A stretch of 64,000 nucleotides of DNA from Salpingoeca rosetta (GCA_033442325.1 JAWQFM010000004.1:903187-967186); one strand, 5' to 3'. Shown: positions 39,032 through 46,931, numbered from the stretch's first letter. Numbers and translations: made by a program. The notes: generated by a model not told the origin, from the letters alone.

Positions 39032-40410
39032 ATGAGTGAGGCGGCATCCTCCTTTGGTCTCGACACCAATCAACTGCGACAAAACCTTACTCCGTGGAGC
39101 GACAGCGCTTGGAGACACCGATCTGACGACGTTCATGACGACACACCAACCCAAACACTTTTTGAGAGAAGGGGCCATGGAGAGACATGGTCTGTGCCAG
39201 ACAGAGAGTCCATTGTGGTTGAAGGCGATGACTCTGTTGTGGTTGAGCGCTGCGCTCAGACATGCCAAGGTGAGACTTGTTGAAAACTTCATCGGCTTGT
39301 GTGAACGCAGGTGCTGATGCATGGGCACAGCACATGTTCACATTGCAACATTGTTGATATGGACCGTAGGACTGTTGTCTGCTTGATTGATCATTGTCTC
39401 ATGACACTGCTTTCTTGCATGGTCAAGTGTATTCATGTGAGGACACGCGATTGCATGCACCTCGCCCCGATCTCACCAAACAGAAGGTGTGTGCGGTGTG
39501 TGTGTATGTGTGTGTGTGTGCGTGTTTGTGTGTGTGTGTGTCTGCTGTGCGAGTGTGCGTTGGCGCGTATGTGTGTGAGTGAGTGTGTACGGTCCATCCG
39601 TCCTTGTGTCTCAATGTTGTGTGTTTGACAATTGCTAAGGCATCCTCCGTGAATACCTCTTCCTCACTGGTTTGCAACTGTGTGTCAGCTGACAACAACA
39701 ACGCGTGAGCTGGTCGAGCTTCGCCAACCCCTACAGGCTGCGCGCACAGGCTTCATGCTTGTGGGTGGGGGACATTCCGGCAAGACGACCACTCTCCACT
39801 CCCTAATGGGTGACGACTTCAGGGAGGACAAAGCTCGCGTCATTGGCACCGACAAGCTGGATCGTTCTGTCGTCGTGACATCCATGGACATCTGCAACTG
39901 GCAGGTGTGTGCGTGCGTGTGTGTGTGTGTCTATTGTGATCGCAGCTTGTCACTTACTGGAGGGCAAGTATCTTTTCCAAGCTCACATGTGCACCTGGAT
40001 TCCACCATGTCACAACAGCCCCTGACGCACGACATCAGTGAATTCGTGCGCACGCTGTCGTACACGGCCCTGCAGAGGACGATTGACCAGCAGCAACAGC
40101 TCAAGGAACAGGTGCAACCTGCAGAAGGCCATGGCATGCAAGACGACAAGCCCCGCCCCTCCTTCTCCTTGTCGCTCAAGCATGAGCGGTCTCATCACAC
40201 ATCTACGACACAAGCCAGCAGGTGTTGCCCCACTGCCTCCACCGAGGAGATTGAGAAGGCAATCAAGGGCATGAACATTTATCTGCCCATCGAGGCAAGC
40301 AAGCCTGGGGTCACCTTCAAAGTGTTTGACCTGGGAGGCCAGTCCACCTTCCACATCTTCTACCCGTTCTTCTTCACCAAGTGAGTGGGATGTATTTGCA
40401 TGTGCGTGTG

Positions 40411-40491
<81 letters not shown>

Positions 40492-43456
40492 GACCACCGC
40501 TCCCCCGCACCACCGCAATTGCCTTCACCCCACACCCTCCTCACTCCACACCACTCCCACAACAGGTACGCGGTGTACCTGCTGGTGTTTTCCATGGAGG
40601 ACCTGCTGCACCAAGACGAGAGCAAGCGAGCAGAGGCGTGGGAGTTTATGGAGCACTGGTTGTCTTCCCTCCACCTTCACGCGAAGGGCGCACCCATCCT
40701 CATCGTCGGCACCTTCGCTGACAAGATCAACGAGCGGAAGCAGCACGAGGGCATCTCACGTGACATTTACAGTCGCCTGCGCCACAATCCCGCTTTCCCT
40801 GGCGTCATCCACAATGACAAGCACGGGCTGTGGTTCTGGCCCGTTGACAACACCAAGTCCATCCGTGACCCCATGATCCAGGACCTGCGCCAGACCATCT
40901 CCTCCACAGCACTGGCGCAGGAGTACGTGAGCCAGGAGGTGGCTGTGCCGTACCTCCACCTCTACGACAAGCTCAACGCCATTGCCCGCGACGAGAAGCG
41001 GCCGCTGCTCACGTTTGATGAGGTGGTGCAGATTGCACGCACATGTGGGCTGCCCACATGCGAGGAGACGAGAGCCTGCCTCCAGTTCCTGCACCTGTAC
41101 TCCATGGTGCTGTACTACGACCACGTGCCAGGCATGGAAGACTATGTGATCCTGAGTCCACAGTGGGCGGTGGACACAATGACGCGCGTCATCCGCAACT
41201 TCGACCTGCACCGCGATGTGCGGGATGGCGAGGCGAGGGCCGTTGGCGCGCAGGTGTGGGACGACCTCGTTGACCGCGGCATCCTGCACCGTCGCCTGCT
41301 TGATGTTCTATGGAAGGAGTTGGGAGGTGACATGATTGAGCCTTTCATTTGCCTCATGAAACATTACGGCCTGTGCATGGAGTACACAACACCAACGGTG
41401 CAACTACCCAGTCATCAACAGCAACATCAACACCACCAACAGTACCTGGTTCCTGCCGTTCTGCCAATGACGATTCGCCACAACACCAGCACGGTGGCGT
41501 CCGTGTCACTGAGCACGACGGCAGCACAGCAGGTCAACCCATATGTTGGTTATGAGGAGAAGACGGCGTTTATCGCCTTCAGCCTGAAACCATTCAAGCG
41601 AAGTGCGAGCGTGCGAGTTGAAGATGCGCAGCAAGCGTCATTCCTGCCAGAGGCTTTGTTCACCGTTGTACTGGCCCATGTGATGGCGCATGCACAGCAC
41701 GGTGCATCGCAGGCGCCCAAGCTGAGTCGCACCCATGCCATCTGCTTCATGGAGTCGACCAAGCTGGAGCTGCAGCTAGTGCCGGCTGTTGGCGGCATCA
41801 AGATGAAGATCACGAGTGCACAGCCGCGCGCCATGCTGCACATGCTGCACACCATGATCAGCGAGGCCGCCAGAGAGCGCTACCCGGAGCTAAAGAGCAG
41901 CCTGTTGGTGCCATTCGACGCCAAGACGCTGCTGTTCTTCGAGGATGTGCTGCACCACCACAAGAGCAAGCAGGACATGTGGGTGCACGAACAGCTCCTG
42001 TCACCCGATGACCTGATCACCAAGTATGACCCTCTCCTGCCCGTTCTCGGCCTGCAGGACAAGTACGACGTCTTCATCAGCTACAGGTACGCTCTGCGGT
42101 TTGTTGTGCTGACACTGCAAATGTTTTGCAGCACCTTGACGCAAATGATGCGTCCGCTTCCTCGTTCAGACTTACCCTTCCTCAATGCTTGAACACTCCT
42201 TCAGGCTCGAAGAGGTCTTCGCTCTCTTGTCAGCAATCGCCAACTTGCAAGGCGCACAGAATCGGCTCAAAGTGCGCGCAGATGCGTGCGACATACTTCC
42301 GACGCCATTGCTGCGACGCACGACCCTGAACGCGTTGGCCCAAAGCACCGTCGTTTGTCCCGTCATATCTGTCTCATCGATCGAACAGATTGTGAAGGAC
42401 TGTCATGACGGCAAACCGAGTGAGCTCCTGCTCGAGTGGACAGCTATTCTTAGTATGAAGGATCTCGTCCGCGGCGACGACAGCGCAGCTGCGCAGAAGC
42501 TACGCCTGCGAACCGTCATTCCAATTATCGTGGCAGCCCCATCTCACCGGAGCGATGATGCCGCCGTGCCAGCCTCACATGAAATCGTGGTTGTGATGCA
42601 GCGGGCCGCAGCGCAGTTGCCGGACACTTCTCATGACCCAACAATGACCACGCTTACTTCGGAATGGAATGTGGGCGTTCAGCTGCCATCGAACCTGCCG
42701 ACACCGCACGTGGTCGTTACAGAGTTGATGGGGAGGGCCGAGGCTGCCGCTGTACCGGTGCTTCAGTCACAACATGACGACTTCGCCACCAACATCGAAC
42801 GATACCTTCTCATTATCATGGACTCTGTACAGGAGCACGGACAATCTGTACACACACGACCAGAAAGTGCAAAGCAACTGCGACAAAAGGCAAAACAATT
42901 GTTCAACCAAACTTACCGACTGCTATGGGGCTTGTCACGGAAGGATCGCGTATTTCTGGCTCAGGAGTGCGACATTGATGCACCCGTGGACATGACGATT
43001 CAGGACCTCATTCGTGGCCTCACAGACACAGTACCTGAAGATGACCCGCTTGGCCTGCCTTTCTTCCATGCGGACAGCCGCCTTAAATGTTTGCTGGAGT
43101 GCGCTGAACGTAGCCTGGGTCCAGACAAGGAAGTGTGCACACGGATTCGTCAACGGCAACAGATCCTGGCACAACTGGATGGACAAGCAGGCTCATCTTC
43201 GGCCGAGGACCAGTCTGCTCATGGCTTGCCTGGTTTTGTTCCGAGAGTTCCATTGCTGTCCTGCTTCCTGCTTCTTGCGCTGTTCTTTGTCTTTGGTTAC
43301 GGTGCGTTCTTCGCATCACTCAGTGTCAGTGTCAGTGACTTGTGTGCATGGCTTCTGCACTGGATCGGCCTTGTTTGAGCAATACAGCTTGTGTTTCTCG
43401 TTTCATAAATGGCAGTGGTCATGTCACTCACAGAAGCATTTCGTGCAAAGGAGTAA
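39032..43456 (+). CDS. ROCO-family protein: Roc GTPase - COR - TIR - X domain - C-terminal TM (~1177 aa). Exons 39032-39269, 39428-39486, 39689-39904, 40019-40380, 40566-42086, 42205-43301, 43416-43456
   Basis: P-loop 'MLVGGGHSGKTT', G3 'FDLGGQ', G4 'LIVGTFAD'. COR 'VILSPQW', 'GIL', 'YLVPAVLP', 'FLPEALF'. TIR 'YDVFISYR|..ALAQSTVVCPVIS..LLLEW..VIPIIV'. Exons join in frame through GT-AG sites (3534 nt). The first two exons and the last exon are less certain; unspliced, the stop is at 43378. Confidence 0.82.
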
Positions 43457-43629
43457 ACTGTTTCCAATAAAGGCAATAATTTCCTTCGACGAAAGGGGAA
43501 AGGAGGTGGTGTTCTTGAAAGAACCTTGAGGAATTTTGTGCGAGGTTTCGTGTGAGGATGCACTTCACAAGCAGAAGCACTTCATTTTCTGCATGTATGT
43601 TGTTCACTGTCACTGACCCAACATCCAAC

Positions 43630-45681
43630 ATGCCGACAAGACGGGAGATTAACTCTGCGTTTGCCAAAATCAAAGGCGAACTGTGGGACCTATCACCTGG
43701 TGACATTGTCAAGCTGGCATCGGCTTGTGGTTTCAGGGGCAGAAATCTTTCTGGACCAGATCTTATCTACAAGCTTGAGTCCCATGTGCCCGAGAATGAG
43801 TCATATCCGTACCTCAGTCCCAAAAGCACCATGCAAACTCTTCTGGAGATTGCTCAGGATTCGTTGGGTGTGGAAGGCGCTGAGCCCCGGCTTTGTCTTC
43901 TTTTGATTCGGTGGCAGGAGGTGTCTGGCCTTCGACCACAACCCCGTGCTGAACCTGAAGTCGTTGTCAATCCCCCACGCCTTGAGCCACGGCAACCCGC
44001 AGCACACCAACCTCCTCAGGCAGCATCGGCGGAGGTTCCACCACAGCCCCAAAGACAGTAAGTCACTTTCGATTCAAATGCTGCTGTCATGCATTGTGGT
44101 GTTCCGGTCCTTGTGCCACACTCATCGTGCTGTGCGTAATGTTGCTGTTTCAGAGTTGTGGAACAAGCCGAGGAAGACACCAGCCAGACCAGTCCTCTGC
44201 ACACCGCTCCACCACAGCAGTTGTTGGAGTTTATCGAGAACGAAATTGTCAACCTCGAATCACAAGACAGGGCGAAGCTTGCCAATGAATGCAGACTGGA
44301 CAGCACCTTGAAACCAGCGGAGCTGGTGCACAAGCTGAAAACAACACGAATTGGACGATATCCAATCCTCAGCGGTGATGGCGACATGGATCCACTTTTG
44401 GCAGCTGTGGAACGCGCCCTGCCCCGAGATCACTTGCTGGAGAAGCTGATTCAGCTGTGGCAAGTTGCTGCAGACAAGAAACCTGGCGATCGAGACGAAC
44501 TGGCAACTGCGCTGCTAACACAATTCTGTCCCTTCCAAGTGCCTGCTGAAACAGCTCCACCGTAAGCCGCTCTCCATTGCTGTTAGACTCAAAATTACTT
44601 GACTTTTGCGCTGTTCCTTGTTCATCCATTCGCAACACGACTGCTTTTACCCACCCTCACGGCCACCACTTGTACGCGCTTCGTTCCTTGTCAACATAAC
44701 AGGGTTGTGATCGTTTGTGCCAAGCCATACGAGTTTGAAGCCATGAACCGCGCACTTGCTCGTTTGGCGGACGTTCGCCGGCACCCGTCTTCAATTGGCC
44801 ATAACTTTGAGAGTGGTTACCGCGGCGAGGAGCGTCTGCCATTCAATCGCTACGATTTCATCATGAGGAAGCGCGGGAAATCGATTCCCATCACTGTGTC
44901 GCGGTTCACTGCAAAGCTGCAAGGTCCAGTTGAGTGCGGCATCCATGCAGGCCAGGTCATCACCACGCTCAAGCCGTCGCACATGGGCATGATTGGCGTC
45001 TGTGGCGGTCATCGCCTCGGAGACATCATCATCGCCACCGAAGCCAAGGACGCTCGTGCCGGGCGCATGGTCATCTCCGCGGACGACGCTCTTGAAAGCG
45101 TGGACCCCGTCGCCTACGACCCAGACTTTCAGGGCTACTTGCAGCGATATGTGTTCAAGCGAGCCAAGCGCCATGAAGTCACGTCCACCTGGACCGGGTC
45201 GGGTGTGGTGGCTGACCACCTGGCGAACACATTCCATCCAACCTCGAGTGCCAACGTACACAAAGAGTCAGTGCTTCACACATACCCTCAGGTGCGTGAG
45301 GACTGCGCGGGACTTGTTCAACTGGACGAAGGCTTGGACATGGAGGCATTCCCGTTCTTCAAGGCCATTCATATGGCAAACGACTCCAAAGCGTACGACA
45401 TTACCGCGCTTCCGGTGATGAAGGCGGTGAGCGACACCAGTGTGCTAGCCCTTGGTGAAGGCAGTGACGCAGCTTTGCAAGAGAGGCAGGACACCAACGA
45501 CTCTGTGTTCTGCCAGGCGCTTGGTTTGGATCTCGCAGAGTTCAAGAGGCAAAAGCAAACGGCCCAGCAAGACCCCAAGCTGCACGAGAAGCGTCGCAGG
45601 CGCTTCCGAACCATTGCCGCCGCTAAGGCCGCCGCCGTCATGGCCGATTTCCTCGACCAGGCCCCATTCCTTCGGAAGTGA
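43630..45681 (+). CDS. X-X-PNP protein: two DED-like helical domains plus a PNP_UDP_1/Pfs-type nucleosidase (604 aa). Exons 43630-44057, 44154-44561, 44703-45681
   Basis: Two GTAAG...AG phase-2 introns join three ORFs in frame (1815 nt). PNP motifs 'VIVCAKPYEFEAM', 'GPVECG', 'MIGVCGG..LGDIII', 'GLDMEA', 'VMKAVSD' and 'AAAKAAAV'. Confidence 0.85.
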
Positions 45682-46931
45682 TGGCTCTCATGCCGCGCGA
45701 GTGTCTTCGTCATGTCATCACGCTTGCTTCCATCTCACTGCCTGTGACGCCTCACTCAACTGGCATTTGTTTCACCTGTTGTATTGTCCGTTGTCGCTTC
45801 CACGTTGCCCACCCTTCCACACGCCGCCTTTGGTGTTTCCTTCGCTTTTTTCGTTCACTTCCTCGGTCAGTTGCAGAGCTGTAGCCTCTTTTCATCTTCT
45901 TACAACAACGTTTCTGAAGCACCATACACTGGTCTTTCTCAGTCCCTCGAATGCATAGAAGCAACGGTCACACAGAGCCAAAAGAGGGCACGATTAGACG
46001 CGCATGGGCCTCTTGCTGTCGGTGCAACTGCCAGCACCACTCAGCACATCTGCGATCTTCTTGTTGTGTGTGCGACACAAAGAGCGCGGTTCCATTGCCC
46101 ACTGCATCGTGGAGTGGCTGCCACTGCTTGTGCAACAGATCAATAACACACGCGCAGCAGCTGTCCCTCTTCTATTGTTGCACCACAGCGACGAGCTGCT
46201 TGCTGGCTGGCCAGCTTGCGTGAACGCGTGGAAGGCCTTCTTTGTGATCGCATCCACAAACCATCCAAGTGCGTGTGCTTGCTCGTTTGCTGTCCTTTGC
46301 TTCTTGTTGGCGAAAAGAGTGGCGCTCACATTGACAAAACGCACCACGCTGTTTGCTTCCTTCTTTGCTTGCCATGTTGACAGAGAAGGAAAATCCTTGC
46401 GTTTCTGGCAACACCTGCCACCCGATTTGGAAGCACTTTCCCGCCCTGCAGCACAAAGCAAAAAGATAAAACAACACAACAATACACAATACACCACAAC
46501 AGTTATTGTGTTGTCGCACACACTCTCCACTGCCACAACAAGCCAACGTGCGCTCGCTCTGTTGTGCGACGCATGTGGACGCCATCCGTGCTCTTCTTCA
46601 CCTTCTTGCTCGTTTGCTGCACTGATGGCTCTTGCCACAGACACAGACAGGTGCACCACGGCGGTGGCAGGATCATGTGTTGTGCAAGAGAAAGCGTGGC
46701 GGTTGTTGGGGAGGATCAAAGTTGTGATTGACACAAGAAGGTCGGCACCTTCCCTTCCACATCAACGCATCAACACCAGCCATCCATCCCACTGATGGAC
46801 TCAAGTCAGTCCAACGGGCATGGTGGACGTGAACGGTGTGCTTGCACCAGTGCAGCAGAGAATGGAGCACAGTGCTGCAGGAGCACCCATCAGCCAATGG
46901 CGAGGACGCCTCATAGACAACGCACCATCGT

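What the first reader, a model, noticed from the sequence alone, without database searches (positions are those of the whole stretch)
42880..44465. Shared ~90-aa helical domain X in three copies, with a DED/death-fold-like pattern
Seen: X1 (~42880-43170) 'LWGLSRKDRVFLAQEC..QDLIRGLTDTVPEDD..LPFF..LLECAERSLG'; X2 (43630-43920) 'LWDLSPGDIVKLASAC..PDLIYKLESHVPENE.YPYL..LLEIAQDSLG'; X3 (~44210-44465) 'IVNLESQDRAKLANEC..AELVHKL..YPIL..LLAAVERALPRDHLL'. The consensus LxxxDxxxLAxxC...[DE]L[IV]xxL...P...LL resembles the death effector domain pattern (LsxedlxxLkflC..ldlfxxLe..RxDLL). One copy on an adaptor plus a tandem pair before an enzyme mirrors the FADD and procaspase-8 layout. DEDs are usually regarded as animal domains, so a DED-like or convergent effector-associated domain here would be notable (inference).
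Basis: partly seen in the sequence, partly recalled or inferred. Interest (0 to 1): 0.85.

Follow-up and report, generated by a model that had tools for sequence, protein, structure and literature searches.

The report
Death-effector-like adaptor domain in a choanoflagellate
A choanoflagellate, from a group reported to lack death-fold domains, has an unannotated ~100-residue helical domain that is predicted to fold like an animal death effector domain and sits on both switch GTPases and a nucleotide-destroying enzyme, like an animal cell-death adaptor.

Summary
The window is Salpingoeca rosetta. It holds three full-length copies of one ~100-aa domain, X. An HMM built only from 11 copies elsewhere in the genome finds X2, X3 and X1 (E 1e-23, 2e-19, 3e-15) and nothing else in the window.

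RNA contigs show two separate genes, not the single fused public model PTSG_02681:
- Gene A: Roc-COR, a TIR-like region, X1 and a hydrophobic tail.
- Gene B: X2, X3 and a PNP_UDP nucleosidase, with two confirmed in-frame introns.

The genome has at least 15 X copies, on Roc-COR, NACHT-type and Rad50-like NTPases, on PNP enzymes and on a membrane protein. All four PNP genes of this clade carry or follow X and lie beside a Roc-COR-X gene.

Most likely X is a divergent death-fold homotypic adaptor that recruits an ATP-nucleosidase-type effector. Binding is inferred, not shown. A giant-virus-like contig encodes X-only proteins.

The parts
39680..40380 (+). Gene A, Roc GTPase exon (P-loop GGGHSGKT). 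The public model starts here, and upstream exons are possible.
   Evidence: Pfam Roc E 3.7e-7 and 3e-12 on the spliced model. An RNA contig joint 40380|40566 marks a 185-nt GT..AG intron holding a (GT)n repeat.
40566..42086 (+). Gene A, rest of Roc plus COR-A/COR-B. The exon ends in the motif YDVFISYR, where the TIR-like region starts.
   Evidence: Pfam COR-A E 1.6e-17. RNA reads here come mostly from near-identical paralogous exons, with many variant letters and loose ends at 42087.
42087..42204 (+). Intron of gene A (118 nt, GT..AG).
   Evidence: Joint in the RNA contig of run X6, and direct reading of the sequence.
42205..42853 (+). Gene A, TIR-like region and linker.
   Evidence: No Pfam hit in gene A itself. 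The region is homologous to the TIR_2-to-X end of paralogue P0007, which includes that protein's sub-threshold TIR_2 region (BLASTP E 2e-17; TIR_2 E 1.5e-5).
42854..43180 (+). X1, a death-effector-like domain at the C-terminal end of gene A.
   Evidence: for the sequence relationship. AF2 model pLDDT 95.8 and DED top hits. A continuous RNA contig over 42202-43420 shows it is not spliced as in PTSG_02681.
43240..43378 (+). Hydrophobic C-terminal tail of gene A (possible tail anchor) and its stop codon at 43376-43378.
   Evidence: Translation. The RNA contig runs through the stop and ends near 43420.
43630..43929 (+). Gene B, likely start codon (ATG 43630) and X2.
   Evidence: The start is placed by analogy with paralogue PTSG_05953 and the Microstomoeca X-PNP protein, both of which start just before X. 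An in-frame stop lies at 43516-43518.
43930..44057 (+). Pro/Gln-rich linker between X2 and X3.
   Evidence: Translation.
44058..44153 (+). In-frame intron of gene B (96 nt, GT..AG).
   Evidence: Joint 44057|44154 in the RNA contig of run X4.
44194..44490 (+). X3, the second death-effector-like domain of gene B (exon 44154-44561).
   Evidence: It is positionally orthologous to the second X of PTSG_05953 (32% identity).
44562..44702 (+). In-frame intron of gene B (141 nt, GT..AG).
   Evidence: Joint 44561|44703 in the RNA contig of run X4.
44703..45681 (+). Gene B, PNP_UDP-type nucleosidase domain with a helical tail. The stop codon is at 45679-45681.
   Evidence: Pfam PNP_UDP_1 at 30.6 bits against a cut-off of 25.1. 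AF2 model (pLDDT 68) matches MTA/SAH nucleosidases and PNPs at Foldseek E about 2e-9, prob 1.0. PADLOC PDC-M60C E 5e-10.

Best explanation
X is a previously unannotated, very divergent member of the death-fold class, closest in shape to death effector domains. It probably works as a homotypic adaptor.

The window holds a two-gene module:
- Gene A is a switch or sensor: Roc-COR GTPase, a TIR-like region, X1 and a hydrophobic tail.
- Gene B is an effector: X2, a linker, X3 and a PNP_UDP nucleosidase of the kind shown elsewhere to destroy ATP.

Proposed mechanism (inferred): a trigger makes the Roc-COR/TIR-like part of gene A oligomerise, which clusters X1. Clustered X1 nucleates assembly of the tandem X2-X3 of gene B. 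Proximity then activates the oligomer-dependent nucleosidase, nucleotides are depleted, and the cell is arrested or killed.

Shown here: the domain family, its predicted fold, the gene structures, the separate transcripts and the genome-wide coupling of X to NTPases and effectors.

Inferred: X-X binding, the trigger, ATP as substrate and the outcome.
For: Family:
- An HMM from the non-window copies finds exactly X1-X3 in the window.
- The genome has at least 15 copies.
- Only 16 proteins among 1.84 billion representatives match at E<=1e-3.

Fold:
- AF2 gives pLDDT 95.8 and pTM 0.85, and all five models score at least 94.5.
- Foldseek's top hit is the PEA-15 DED, prob 0.87.

Adaptor-like distribution:
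- X is found at the C-terminus of LRR-Roc-COR proteins and of Roc-COR-TIR_2.
- X is found at the N-terminus of a NACHT-type NPHP3_N NTPase, a Rad50/SbcC-like ATPase and the PNP enzymes.
- X is also found on a membrane protein.

Linkage:
- The genome has exactly four PNP genes of this clade.
- Each carries or follows X exons and lies within about 6 kb of a Roc-COR-X gene, in tandem or divergent orientation.

Separate genes:
- The RNA contig of run X6 covers 42202-43420 at depth 40 with almost nothing on gene B.
- Run X4 covers spliced gene B and nothing over 42167-43545.

Conservation:
- Microstomoeca roanoka transcripts encode X-PNP.

Effector:
- PNP fold.
- Residues E10, G98-G102, M213-E214 and S243-D244 are invariant in five sequences.
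- The sponge Death-domain-PNP protein DDAN is an ATP nucleosidase (bioRxiv 10.1101/2023.01.24.525353).

The pattern matches the 'EAD principle' of Kaur et al. 2021 (PMC8195603).
Against: - There is no sequence-level link to any death-fold family. Pfam gave nothing at E<=10. The Pfam DED and Death HMMs find nothing in the genome. PDB profile searches gave only chance hits.
- The model has five helices, not six. The DED RxDL motif and the helix-2 hydrophobic patch are not conserved in alignment A3.
- The fold rests on one AF2 model made from a 14-sequence alignment. The complex job's ESMFold2 runs, which did not use my alignments, were unsure of the fold of X2, the partner chain (pLDDT under 50).
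- No evidence of X-X binding was obtained.
- Gene adjacency at the four loci could partly reflect block duplication.
- Two raw RNA-seq runs show no reads over X1 or gene B.
Confidence: 0.6

Rival explanations
1. X is an adaptor or effector-associated domain that arrived at a death-like helical packing independently. It would work like a death-fold adaptor but share no ancestry with animal DED, DD, CARD or PYD domains.
Against: Among 48,161 chains the top nine hits are one sub-family (DED), and 14 of the top 15 plus three more down to rank 20 are death-fold. A gap of 2.6 Z units separates them from the first unrelated fold, and nearly the whole DED is covered. The functional context is also that of death-fold domains: NACHT, TIR-like and tandem-domain-plus-enzyme architectures, and sponge Death-PNP.
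Confidence: 0.22
2. X is not a homotypic adaptor. It is a shared regulatory or ligand- or target-binding module, for example an autoinhibitory cap, or a docking site for one common third partner or for a pathogen product. Genes A and B would then act independently.
For: Binding was not shown (one search gave no verdict). The most conserved part of X is a surface loop rather than the helices that form DED interfaces. X-only small proteins exist (C15:322911; a giant-virus contig), which could be ligands or regulators. In the runs examined, genes A and B are not co-expressed.
Against: All four PNP genes carry or follow X and lie beside a Roc-COR-X gene. X is placed terminally on both NTPase cores and effectors, which is the signature of recruitment domains. 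The tandem X in the effector is conserved by position between paralogues.
Confidence: 0.13
3. X is a SAP/HeH- or homeodomain-like nucleic-acid-binding helical module, and the death-fold resemblance is an artefact of modelling.
For: The first half of X (L-x-x-L-S-x-x-E-x-x-x-L-A-x-x-C-G) gives weak partial hits to unrelated helix-turn-helix-like segments: the MATa1 homeodomain at E 0.5, a metagenomic repeat protein P0011, and fish repeats P0009 (hhalign prob 81 over 59 columns only).
Against: Those hits cover only helices 1-2 and are at chance level. The full 100-residue unit is conserved as a whole. No SAP or HTH structure appears among the top structural matches. The fusion partners are NTPase switches and enzymes, not chromatin proteins.
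Confidence: 0.04

Closest known systems
Tandem-DED proteins: procaspase-8, cFLIP, and viral FLIP MC159 with FADD
   Different: - No detectable sequence similarity, and the RxDL motif is not conserved.
- Helix 3 is replaced by a loop, and an extra conserved loop sits before helix 5.
- X2 and X3 are joined by a ~60-residue Pro/Gln-rich linker rather than packed as a rigid tandem.
- The enzyme is a nucleosidase, not a caspase.
- The upstream partner is a Roc-COR GTPase, not a DD-DED adaptor.
DDAN of the sponge Amphimedon queenslandica (Death domain plus C-terminal Cap17-like PNP ATP nucleosidase; Rousset et al. 2023, bioRxiv 10.1101/2023.01.24.525353)
   Same: The architecture is a death-fold domain N-terminal to a PNP_UDP domain. 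The PNP fold and an immune-like context are shared.
   Different: DDAN has a Pfam-recognisable Death domain, whereas X is DED-like in shape and matches no Pfam family. Gene B has two copies. ATP nucleosidase activity and membership of the Cap17 clade were not tested for the S. rosetta enzyme.
Bacterial effector-associated domains and bacterial Death-like domains (EAD1-12, bDLD1-3; Kaur et al. 2020 and 2021, PMC7159879 and PMC8195603)
   Same: The organising principle is the same. One small helical domain is fused either to effectors (PNPase, TIR, trypsin, membrane proteins) or to NTPase cores, with several copies per genome and often in neighbouring genes (one search compared). A sludge metagenome protein even has a trypsin-like end followed by X.
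   Different: X occurs in a eukaryote with introns and on Roc-COR, NACHT-type and Rad50-like proteins. No bacterial protein matched the X profile over its full length among 1.84 billion representatives; P0011, of unknown origin, matched over helices 1-3 only. The relation to bDLD profiles could not be tested here.
ROCO proteins carrying a death domain (human DAPK1) and brown-algal ROCO immune-receptor candidates (PMC11378527)
   Same: A Roc-COR switch is combined with a death-fold-type domain at the C-terminal end.
   Different: DAPK1 has a kinase and a canonical Death domain. Gene A has a TIR-like region, the X domain and a hydrophobic tail, and it is paired with a separate effector gene.

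Membership tests
Death-fold superfamily (structural class) | Compact antiparallel bundle of six helices with Greek-key order, about 80-100 residues | tested here: met
Death-fold superfamily (structural class) | Homotypic binding or filament formation | tested here: inconclusive
   The X1+X2 complex prediction gave 'no answer' (score 0.00, partner fold uncertain). It needs an experiment.
Death-fold superfamily (structural class) | Found on both upstream sensors or adaptors and downstream effectors of one pathway | tested here: met
   X is on Roc-COR, NPHP3_N (NACHT-type) and Rad50-like NTPases, and also on PNP and membrane proteins. All four PNP genes lie beside Roc-COR-X genes.
DED family (Pfam PF01335) | Significant match to the family profile | tested here: not met
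   hmmscan of nine X copies at E<=10 gave no DED hit. The PF01335 HMM finds nothing in the genome at E<=1. PDB profile searches found no DED chain.
DED family (Pfam PF01335) | RxDL motif at the start of helix 6 and the E/D-RxDL charge triad (feature recalled from the literature) | tested here: not met
   In alignment A3 the equivalent place reads G-x-[D/E/R]-H-[I/V]. Only X3 has R-D-H-L-L. The residue equivalence was judged by eye, not from a structural alignment.
DED family (Pfam PF01335) | DEDs are the nearest structural neighbours within the death-fold | tested here: met
Effector-associated domains / bDLD (Kaur et al.) | A small non-catalytic domain fused alternately to effectors and to NTPase cores, in several copies per genome and in neighbouring genes | tested here: met
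   The principle is quoted from PMC8195603.
Effector-associated domains / bDLD (Kaur et al.) | Sequence-profile membership in EAD1-12 or bDLD1-3 | not testable with these tools
   Their alignments are not on hand. No bacterial protein matched the X profile over its full length in 1.84 billion representatives.
Cap17-like immune ATP nucleosidase (PNP_UDP_1 clade) | PNP_UDP_1 domain and fold | tested here: met
   Pfam 30.6 bits against a cut-off of 25.1. Foldseek to MTAN/PNP at E about 2e-9, prob 1.0.
Cap17-like immune ATP nucleosidase (PNP_UDP_1 clade) | Placement inside the defensive Cap17/DtcC clade, and ATP/dATP N-glycosidase activity | not tested
   The only supporting data are PADLOC PDC-M60C at E 5e-10 and a weak CBASS PN-superfamily effector hit.
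ROCO proteins | Roc GTPase followed by COR | tested here: met
   Roc E 3e-12 and COR-A E 4e-17 on the spliced gene A.
TIR domain | Match to a TIR profile | tested here: inconclusive
   Gene A has no Pfam TIR hit. It starts with the motif YDVFISYR and is homologous (E 2e-17) to the paralogue region that scores TIR_2 at 25.9 bits against a cut-off of 28.

The most novel reading that the evidence does not exclude
X is a true homologue of animal death effector domains that survives in choanoflagellates. On this reading, death-fold 'sensor NTPase - adaptor - enzyme' signalling, here ending in nucleotide destruction rather than caspase cleavage, predates animals. Giant viruses of such protists would then carry X-only, FLIP-like decoys that block it.
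Probability: 0.3. Interest if true: 0.9.

Novelty: new variant of a known kind. Interest (0 to 1): 0.74.

Why it matters
Surveys of choanoflagellate gene content state that neither Death nor CARD domains occur in any choanoflagellate (Richter et al. 2018, PMC6040629). [quoted passage not shown] 2019, PMC6792448).

- It would move the assembly logic of animal cell-death and innate-immune signalling to before multicellularity.
- It would connect the sponge Death-PNP ATP nucleosidase to an older module.
- It would give a genetically tractable organism, S. rosetta, in which to test this.

It also shows that profile-based domain censuses miss such families, and it corrects a fused gene model (PTSG_02681). 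The giant-virus homologues suggest a host-virus arms race around this domain.

Tried and rejected
- Complex prediction of X1 with X2: 'no answer', score 0.00 with the partner's fold uncertain. This is not evidence either way.
- ESM Atlas shape search with the X1 model: all TM below 0.46, nothing useful.
- ESM Atlas feature search with X1: no usable hit.
- Foldseek against viral structures, BFVD: nothing significant.
- PDB sequence-profile searches with A3 and A4: only chance-level hits (triosephosphate isomerase, MATa1 homeodomain).
- Pfam on X copies: none.
- PNP-domain homologue searches: only S. rosetta paralogues and one metagenomic protein. The test of whether the nearest PNP relatives carry Death domains therefore failed.
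- phmmer of the PNP domain against PDB sequences: none.
- Search of IMG/VR for the virus-like X protein: the alignment was too variable for patterns, and the single protein found nothing.
- Supplement of Rousset et al. searched for the S. rosetta accessions: absent.
- Two raw RNA-seq runs (X16, X17): no reads over 42167-43939 (X1 and the first gene-B exon) and under one read per base over the rest of gene B, so they say nothing on its ends.
- A profile-profile test against DED/DD/CARD/PYD profiles could not be run. No tool here supplies those family alignments, and I did not type sequences from memory.
- I considered using the second structure job for the tandem X-X. I rejected this because the two copies are separated by a long low-complexity linker.
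Full report
**What the sequence is**

The window is eukaryotic. It has (GT)n/(CA)n microsatellites, GT..AG introns and 49-64% G+C in 2-kb windows. Its predicted proteins are letter-for-letter those of Salpingoeca rosetta: PTSG_02681, PTSG_05953 and others. The assembly is 55.4 Mb in 68 contigs, and the window is C4:903187-967186.

**Check of the observation**

The three copies exist at X1 42854-43180, X2 43630-43929 and X3 44194-44490.
- BLASTP gives X1-X2 E 1e-10 (34% identity over 89 aa) and X1-X3 E 3e-4. X2-X3 is not significant alone.
- An HMM made only from 11 copies elsewhere in the genome, searched against all 986 six-frame open stretches of the window, finds X2 (1e-23), X3 (2e-19) and X1 (3e-15) over its full length. 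Nothing else scores at E<=10.

The repeat is therefore real and far beyond chance.

**Gene structure**

The public model PTSG_02681 (1593 aa) fuses everything from Roc to the enzyme. It also splices out the first half of X1 and the first helix of X2. RNA-derived contigs contradict it.
- One contig (run X6) joins 42086|42205, a 118-nt intron inside the TIR-like region. It then runs unbroken from 42202 to 43420, through X1, the hydrophobic tail and the stop at 43376-43378. Depth is about 40 there and almost nil over gene B.
- Contigs of another study (run X4) cover 43697-45900 and show both in-frame introns spliced (44058-44153, 96 nt; 44562-44702, 141 nt). They show nothing over 42167-43545.

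There are therefore two transcription units.
- Gene A is Roc (Pfam E 3e-12), COR-A (4e-17), a TIR-like region, X1 and a hydrophobic tail. The TIR-like region has no Pfam hit itself. It is homologous at E 2e-17 to the paralogue region that scores a sub-threshold TIR_2.
- Gene B most likely starts at ATG 43630. This is by analogy with its paralogue PTSG_05953 and the Microstomoeca protein, which both begin just before X. It encodes X2, a Pro/Gln-rich linker, X3 and a PNP_UDP_1 domain (30.6 bits against a cut-off of 25.1).

Two raw RNA-seq runs had no reads over X1 and the first gene-B exon and almost none over the rest of gene B. Their reads on the COR exon come from near-identical paralogous exons that continue into other downstream exons.

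**The family**

The genome holds at least 15 X copies. By Pfam and by reading the models, X is found in these places:
- at the C-terminus of two LRR-Roc-COR proteins, of a third Roc-COR-type copy at C18:501495 read from its open frame, and of a Roc-COR-TIR_2 protein;
- at the N-terminus of an NPHP3_N (NACHT-type) NTPase and of a Rad50/SbcC-like ATPase;
- N-terminal to PNP enzymes;
- on a small protein with C-terminal membrane helices;
- on small solo proteins.

The genome has exactly four PNP genes of this clade.
- The window copy is one of them.
- C15:724138-725097 has a tandem X-X in front, positionally orthologous to X2 and X3 at 41% and 32% identity.
- C18:595540-596532 has its X exon 7 kb upstream, across an inserted gypsy-type retroelement.
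- C18:494840-495457 is a truncated copy with a partial X.

Every one of them lies within about 6 kb of a Roc-COR-X gene. The pair is tandem in the window and divergent at the other three loci.

Outside this genome the family is very rare. Among 1.84 billion representative proteins, 16 match at E<=1e-3.
- Most are S. rosetta proteins.
- Microstomoeca roanoka transcripts encode an X-PNP protein of 452 aa.
- A few are metagenomic proteins.

Profile-profile comparison of the S. rosetta set with the metagenomic set gives probability 97.4% and E 9e-12 over 102 columns.

**Fold**

X matches no Pfam family at E<=10 and no PDB sequence. The Pfam DED and Death profiles find nothing anywhere in the genome.

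AlphaFold2 with the 14-sequence alignment gives a very confident model: pLDDT 95.8, pTM 0.85, and all five models at least 94.5. Its helices are at residues 6-25, 29-38, 49-58, 78-88 and 93-108.

Foldseek's best PDB hit is the PEA-15 death effector domain (prob 0.87, TM 0.52/0.60), but at a non-significant E of 0.78.

The exhaustive VIA-align search of 48,161 chains is clearer.
- FADD DD (6.4), AIM2 PYD (6.0), other DD and PYD chains, and CARDs (4.8) follow.

Differences from DEDs:
- The helix-3 position is a loop.
- A 17-19-residue loop with the family's most conserved motif (C-P...P-Y-L-S-x-D-S-D-L-x-P-L) is inserted before helix 5.
- The RxDL motif is not kept. The consensus is G-x-[D/E/R]-H-[I/V], and only X3 reads R-D-H-L-L.

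Homology with animal DEDs is therefore open (about 0.5). Membership of Pfam DED was tested and not met.

**Effector**

The PNP domain model (pLDDT 68) matches MTA/SAH nucleosidases and purine nucleoside phosphorylases at E about 2e-9, prob 1.0. The residues invariant in five sequences include E10, the G-x-x-G-G stretch, M-E at 213-214 and S-D at 243-244. From my own knowledge of MTAN, these correspond to catalytic and ribose-binding motifs; I did not test this mapping. The best defence-library hit is PDC-M60C at E 5e-10.

Rousset et al. showed that Cap17-like PNP domains of bacterial defence systems cleave ATP and dATP. They also showed that the sponge protein DDAN, a Death domain plus C-terminal PNP, has this activity. 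Gene B has the same architecture with X in place of Death.

**How it most likely works**

This is inference. The distribution is the 'effector-associated domain' pattern that Kaur et al. describe for bacterial death-like domains and that animal death-fold adaptors show. I propose that activation of the Roc-COR/TIR-like part of gene A clusters X1. Clustered X1 would recruit and nucleate the tandem X2-X3 of gene B. Induced proximity would then switch on the nucleosidase, depleting ATP or another nucleotide. Gene A's hydrophobic tail suggests that this happens at a membrane. X-X binding, the trigger and the substrate are not shown, and the one complex prediction gave no verdict.

**Virus link**

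This was noticed in passing and partly followed. One X protein with three tandem copies lies on a 17-kb metagenomic contig of 25% G+C, with densely packed intron-less genes. The two genes next to it hold one and two further X copies and nothing else recognisable. Two paralogous genes on that contig match Nucleocytoviricota major-capsid-like clusters (feature score 0.97, TM 0.57), and DUF5771 and a Hint module are also present. This is most simply a giant virus encoding X-only proteins, a situation that recalls viral FLIPs. A decoy function is speculation.

**Literature**

Richter et al. 2018 state that neither Death nor CARD was present in any choanoflagellate studied. Lopez-Escardo et al. [quoted passage not shown] My searches found no paper describing this family or a choanoflagellate death-fold domain.

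**Verdict**

X is a new, unannotated, DED-like death-fold family used in an adaptor-like way in a choanoflagellate. It is a new variant of a known kind of system. Interest is high because it bears on the pre-animal origin of death-fold signalling and can be tested directly in S. rosetta.

Noticed in passing
L040:8001-10020 (ENA metagenome contig k141_8485246, 17.4 kb): A contig of 25% G+C with dense intron-less genes has two Nucleocytoviricota capsid-like paralogues, DUF5771 and a Hint module. It carries three adjacent genes made only of X domains (3, 1 and 2 copies). It looks like a giant virus encoding FLIP-like X-only proteins.
   Followed up: partly
window 39680-45681: The public model PTSG_02681 (1593 aa) fuses two genes. 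It removes the first half of X1 and the first helix of X2 as false introns. RNA contigs show an unspliced X1, a stop at 43378 and separate expression of the two genes.
   Followed up: yes
G000:C18:588445-596532 (L034): In this paralogue the X exon and its PNP exon are separated by about 7 kb. The gap holds a full-length gypsy-type retroelement (gag, protease, RT, integrase, chromodomain) and an (SL)n repeat. The gene is interrupted or has a very large intron.
   Followed up: partly
G000:C18:494840-495603 (L025): A degenerate copy with a partial X (profile positions 35-95) overlapping a PNP domain that lacks its first 124 positions. It is probably a pseudogene, and it lies next to an intact Roc-COR-X gene at C18:501495.
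   Followed up: no
window 40394-42166: RNA reads on the COR exon carry many fixed differences. They run on at 42087 into other sequences, so they come from near-identical COR exons of paralogues with different downstream exons. This is an exon-shuffled ROCO family.
   Followed up: partly
P0020 (JGI metagenome 3300030741, 395 aa): The closest non-choanoflagellate relative of the PNP domain has a ~95-residue helical N-terminal region. By eye it looks CARD- or death-like, but it has no Pfam match.
   Followed up: no
P0009 (Umbra pygmaea, 560 aa): A fish C2H2 zinc-finger protein has three ~100-residue repeats whose first half resembles helices 1-3 of X (hmmsearch E 1e-8; hhalign prob 81%, E 1.3e-5 over 59 columns). 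It could be a distant animal relative or only a shared helix pattern.
   Followed up: partly
P0016 and P0015 (activated sludge metagenome ERZ937805): Two short contigs from one sample encode X. One has X after the end of a trypsin-like peptidase (Trypsin_2 E 1e-4), which is another effector-X fusion in an unknown organism.
   Followed up: partly
window 44491-44561 and PTSG_05953 residues about 235-270: The stretch after X3 begins like another X helix pair (L-W-x-x-A-x-D-K-K-P-G-D-R-D-E-L-A-T-A-L-L) and is conserved in the paralogue. It may be a short conserved helix linking X3 to the enzyme.
   Followed up: no
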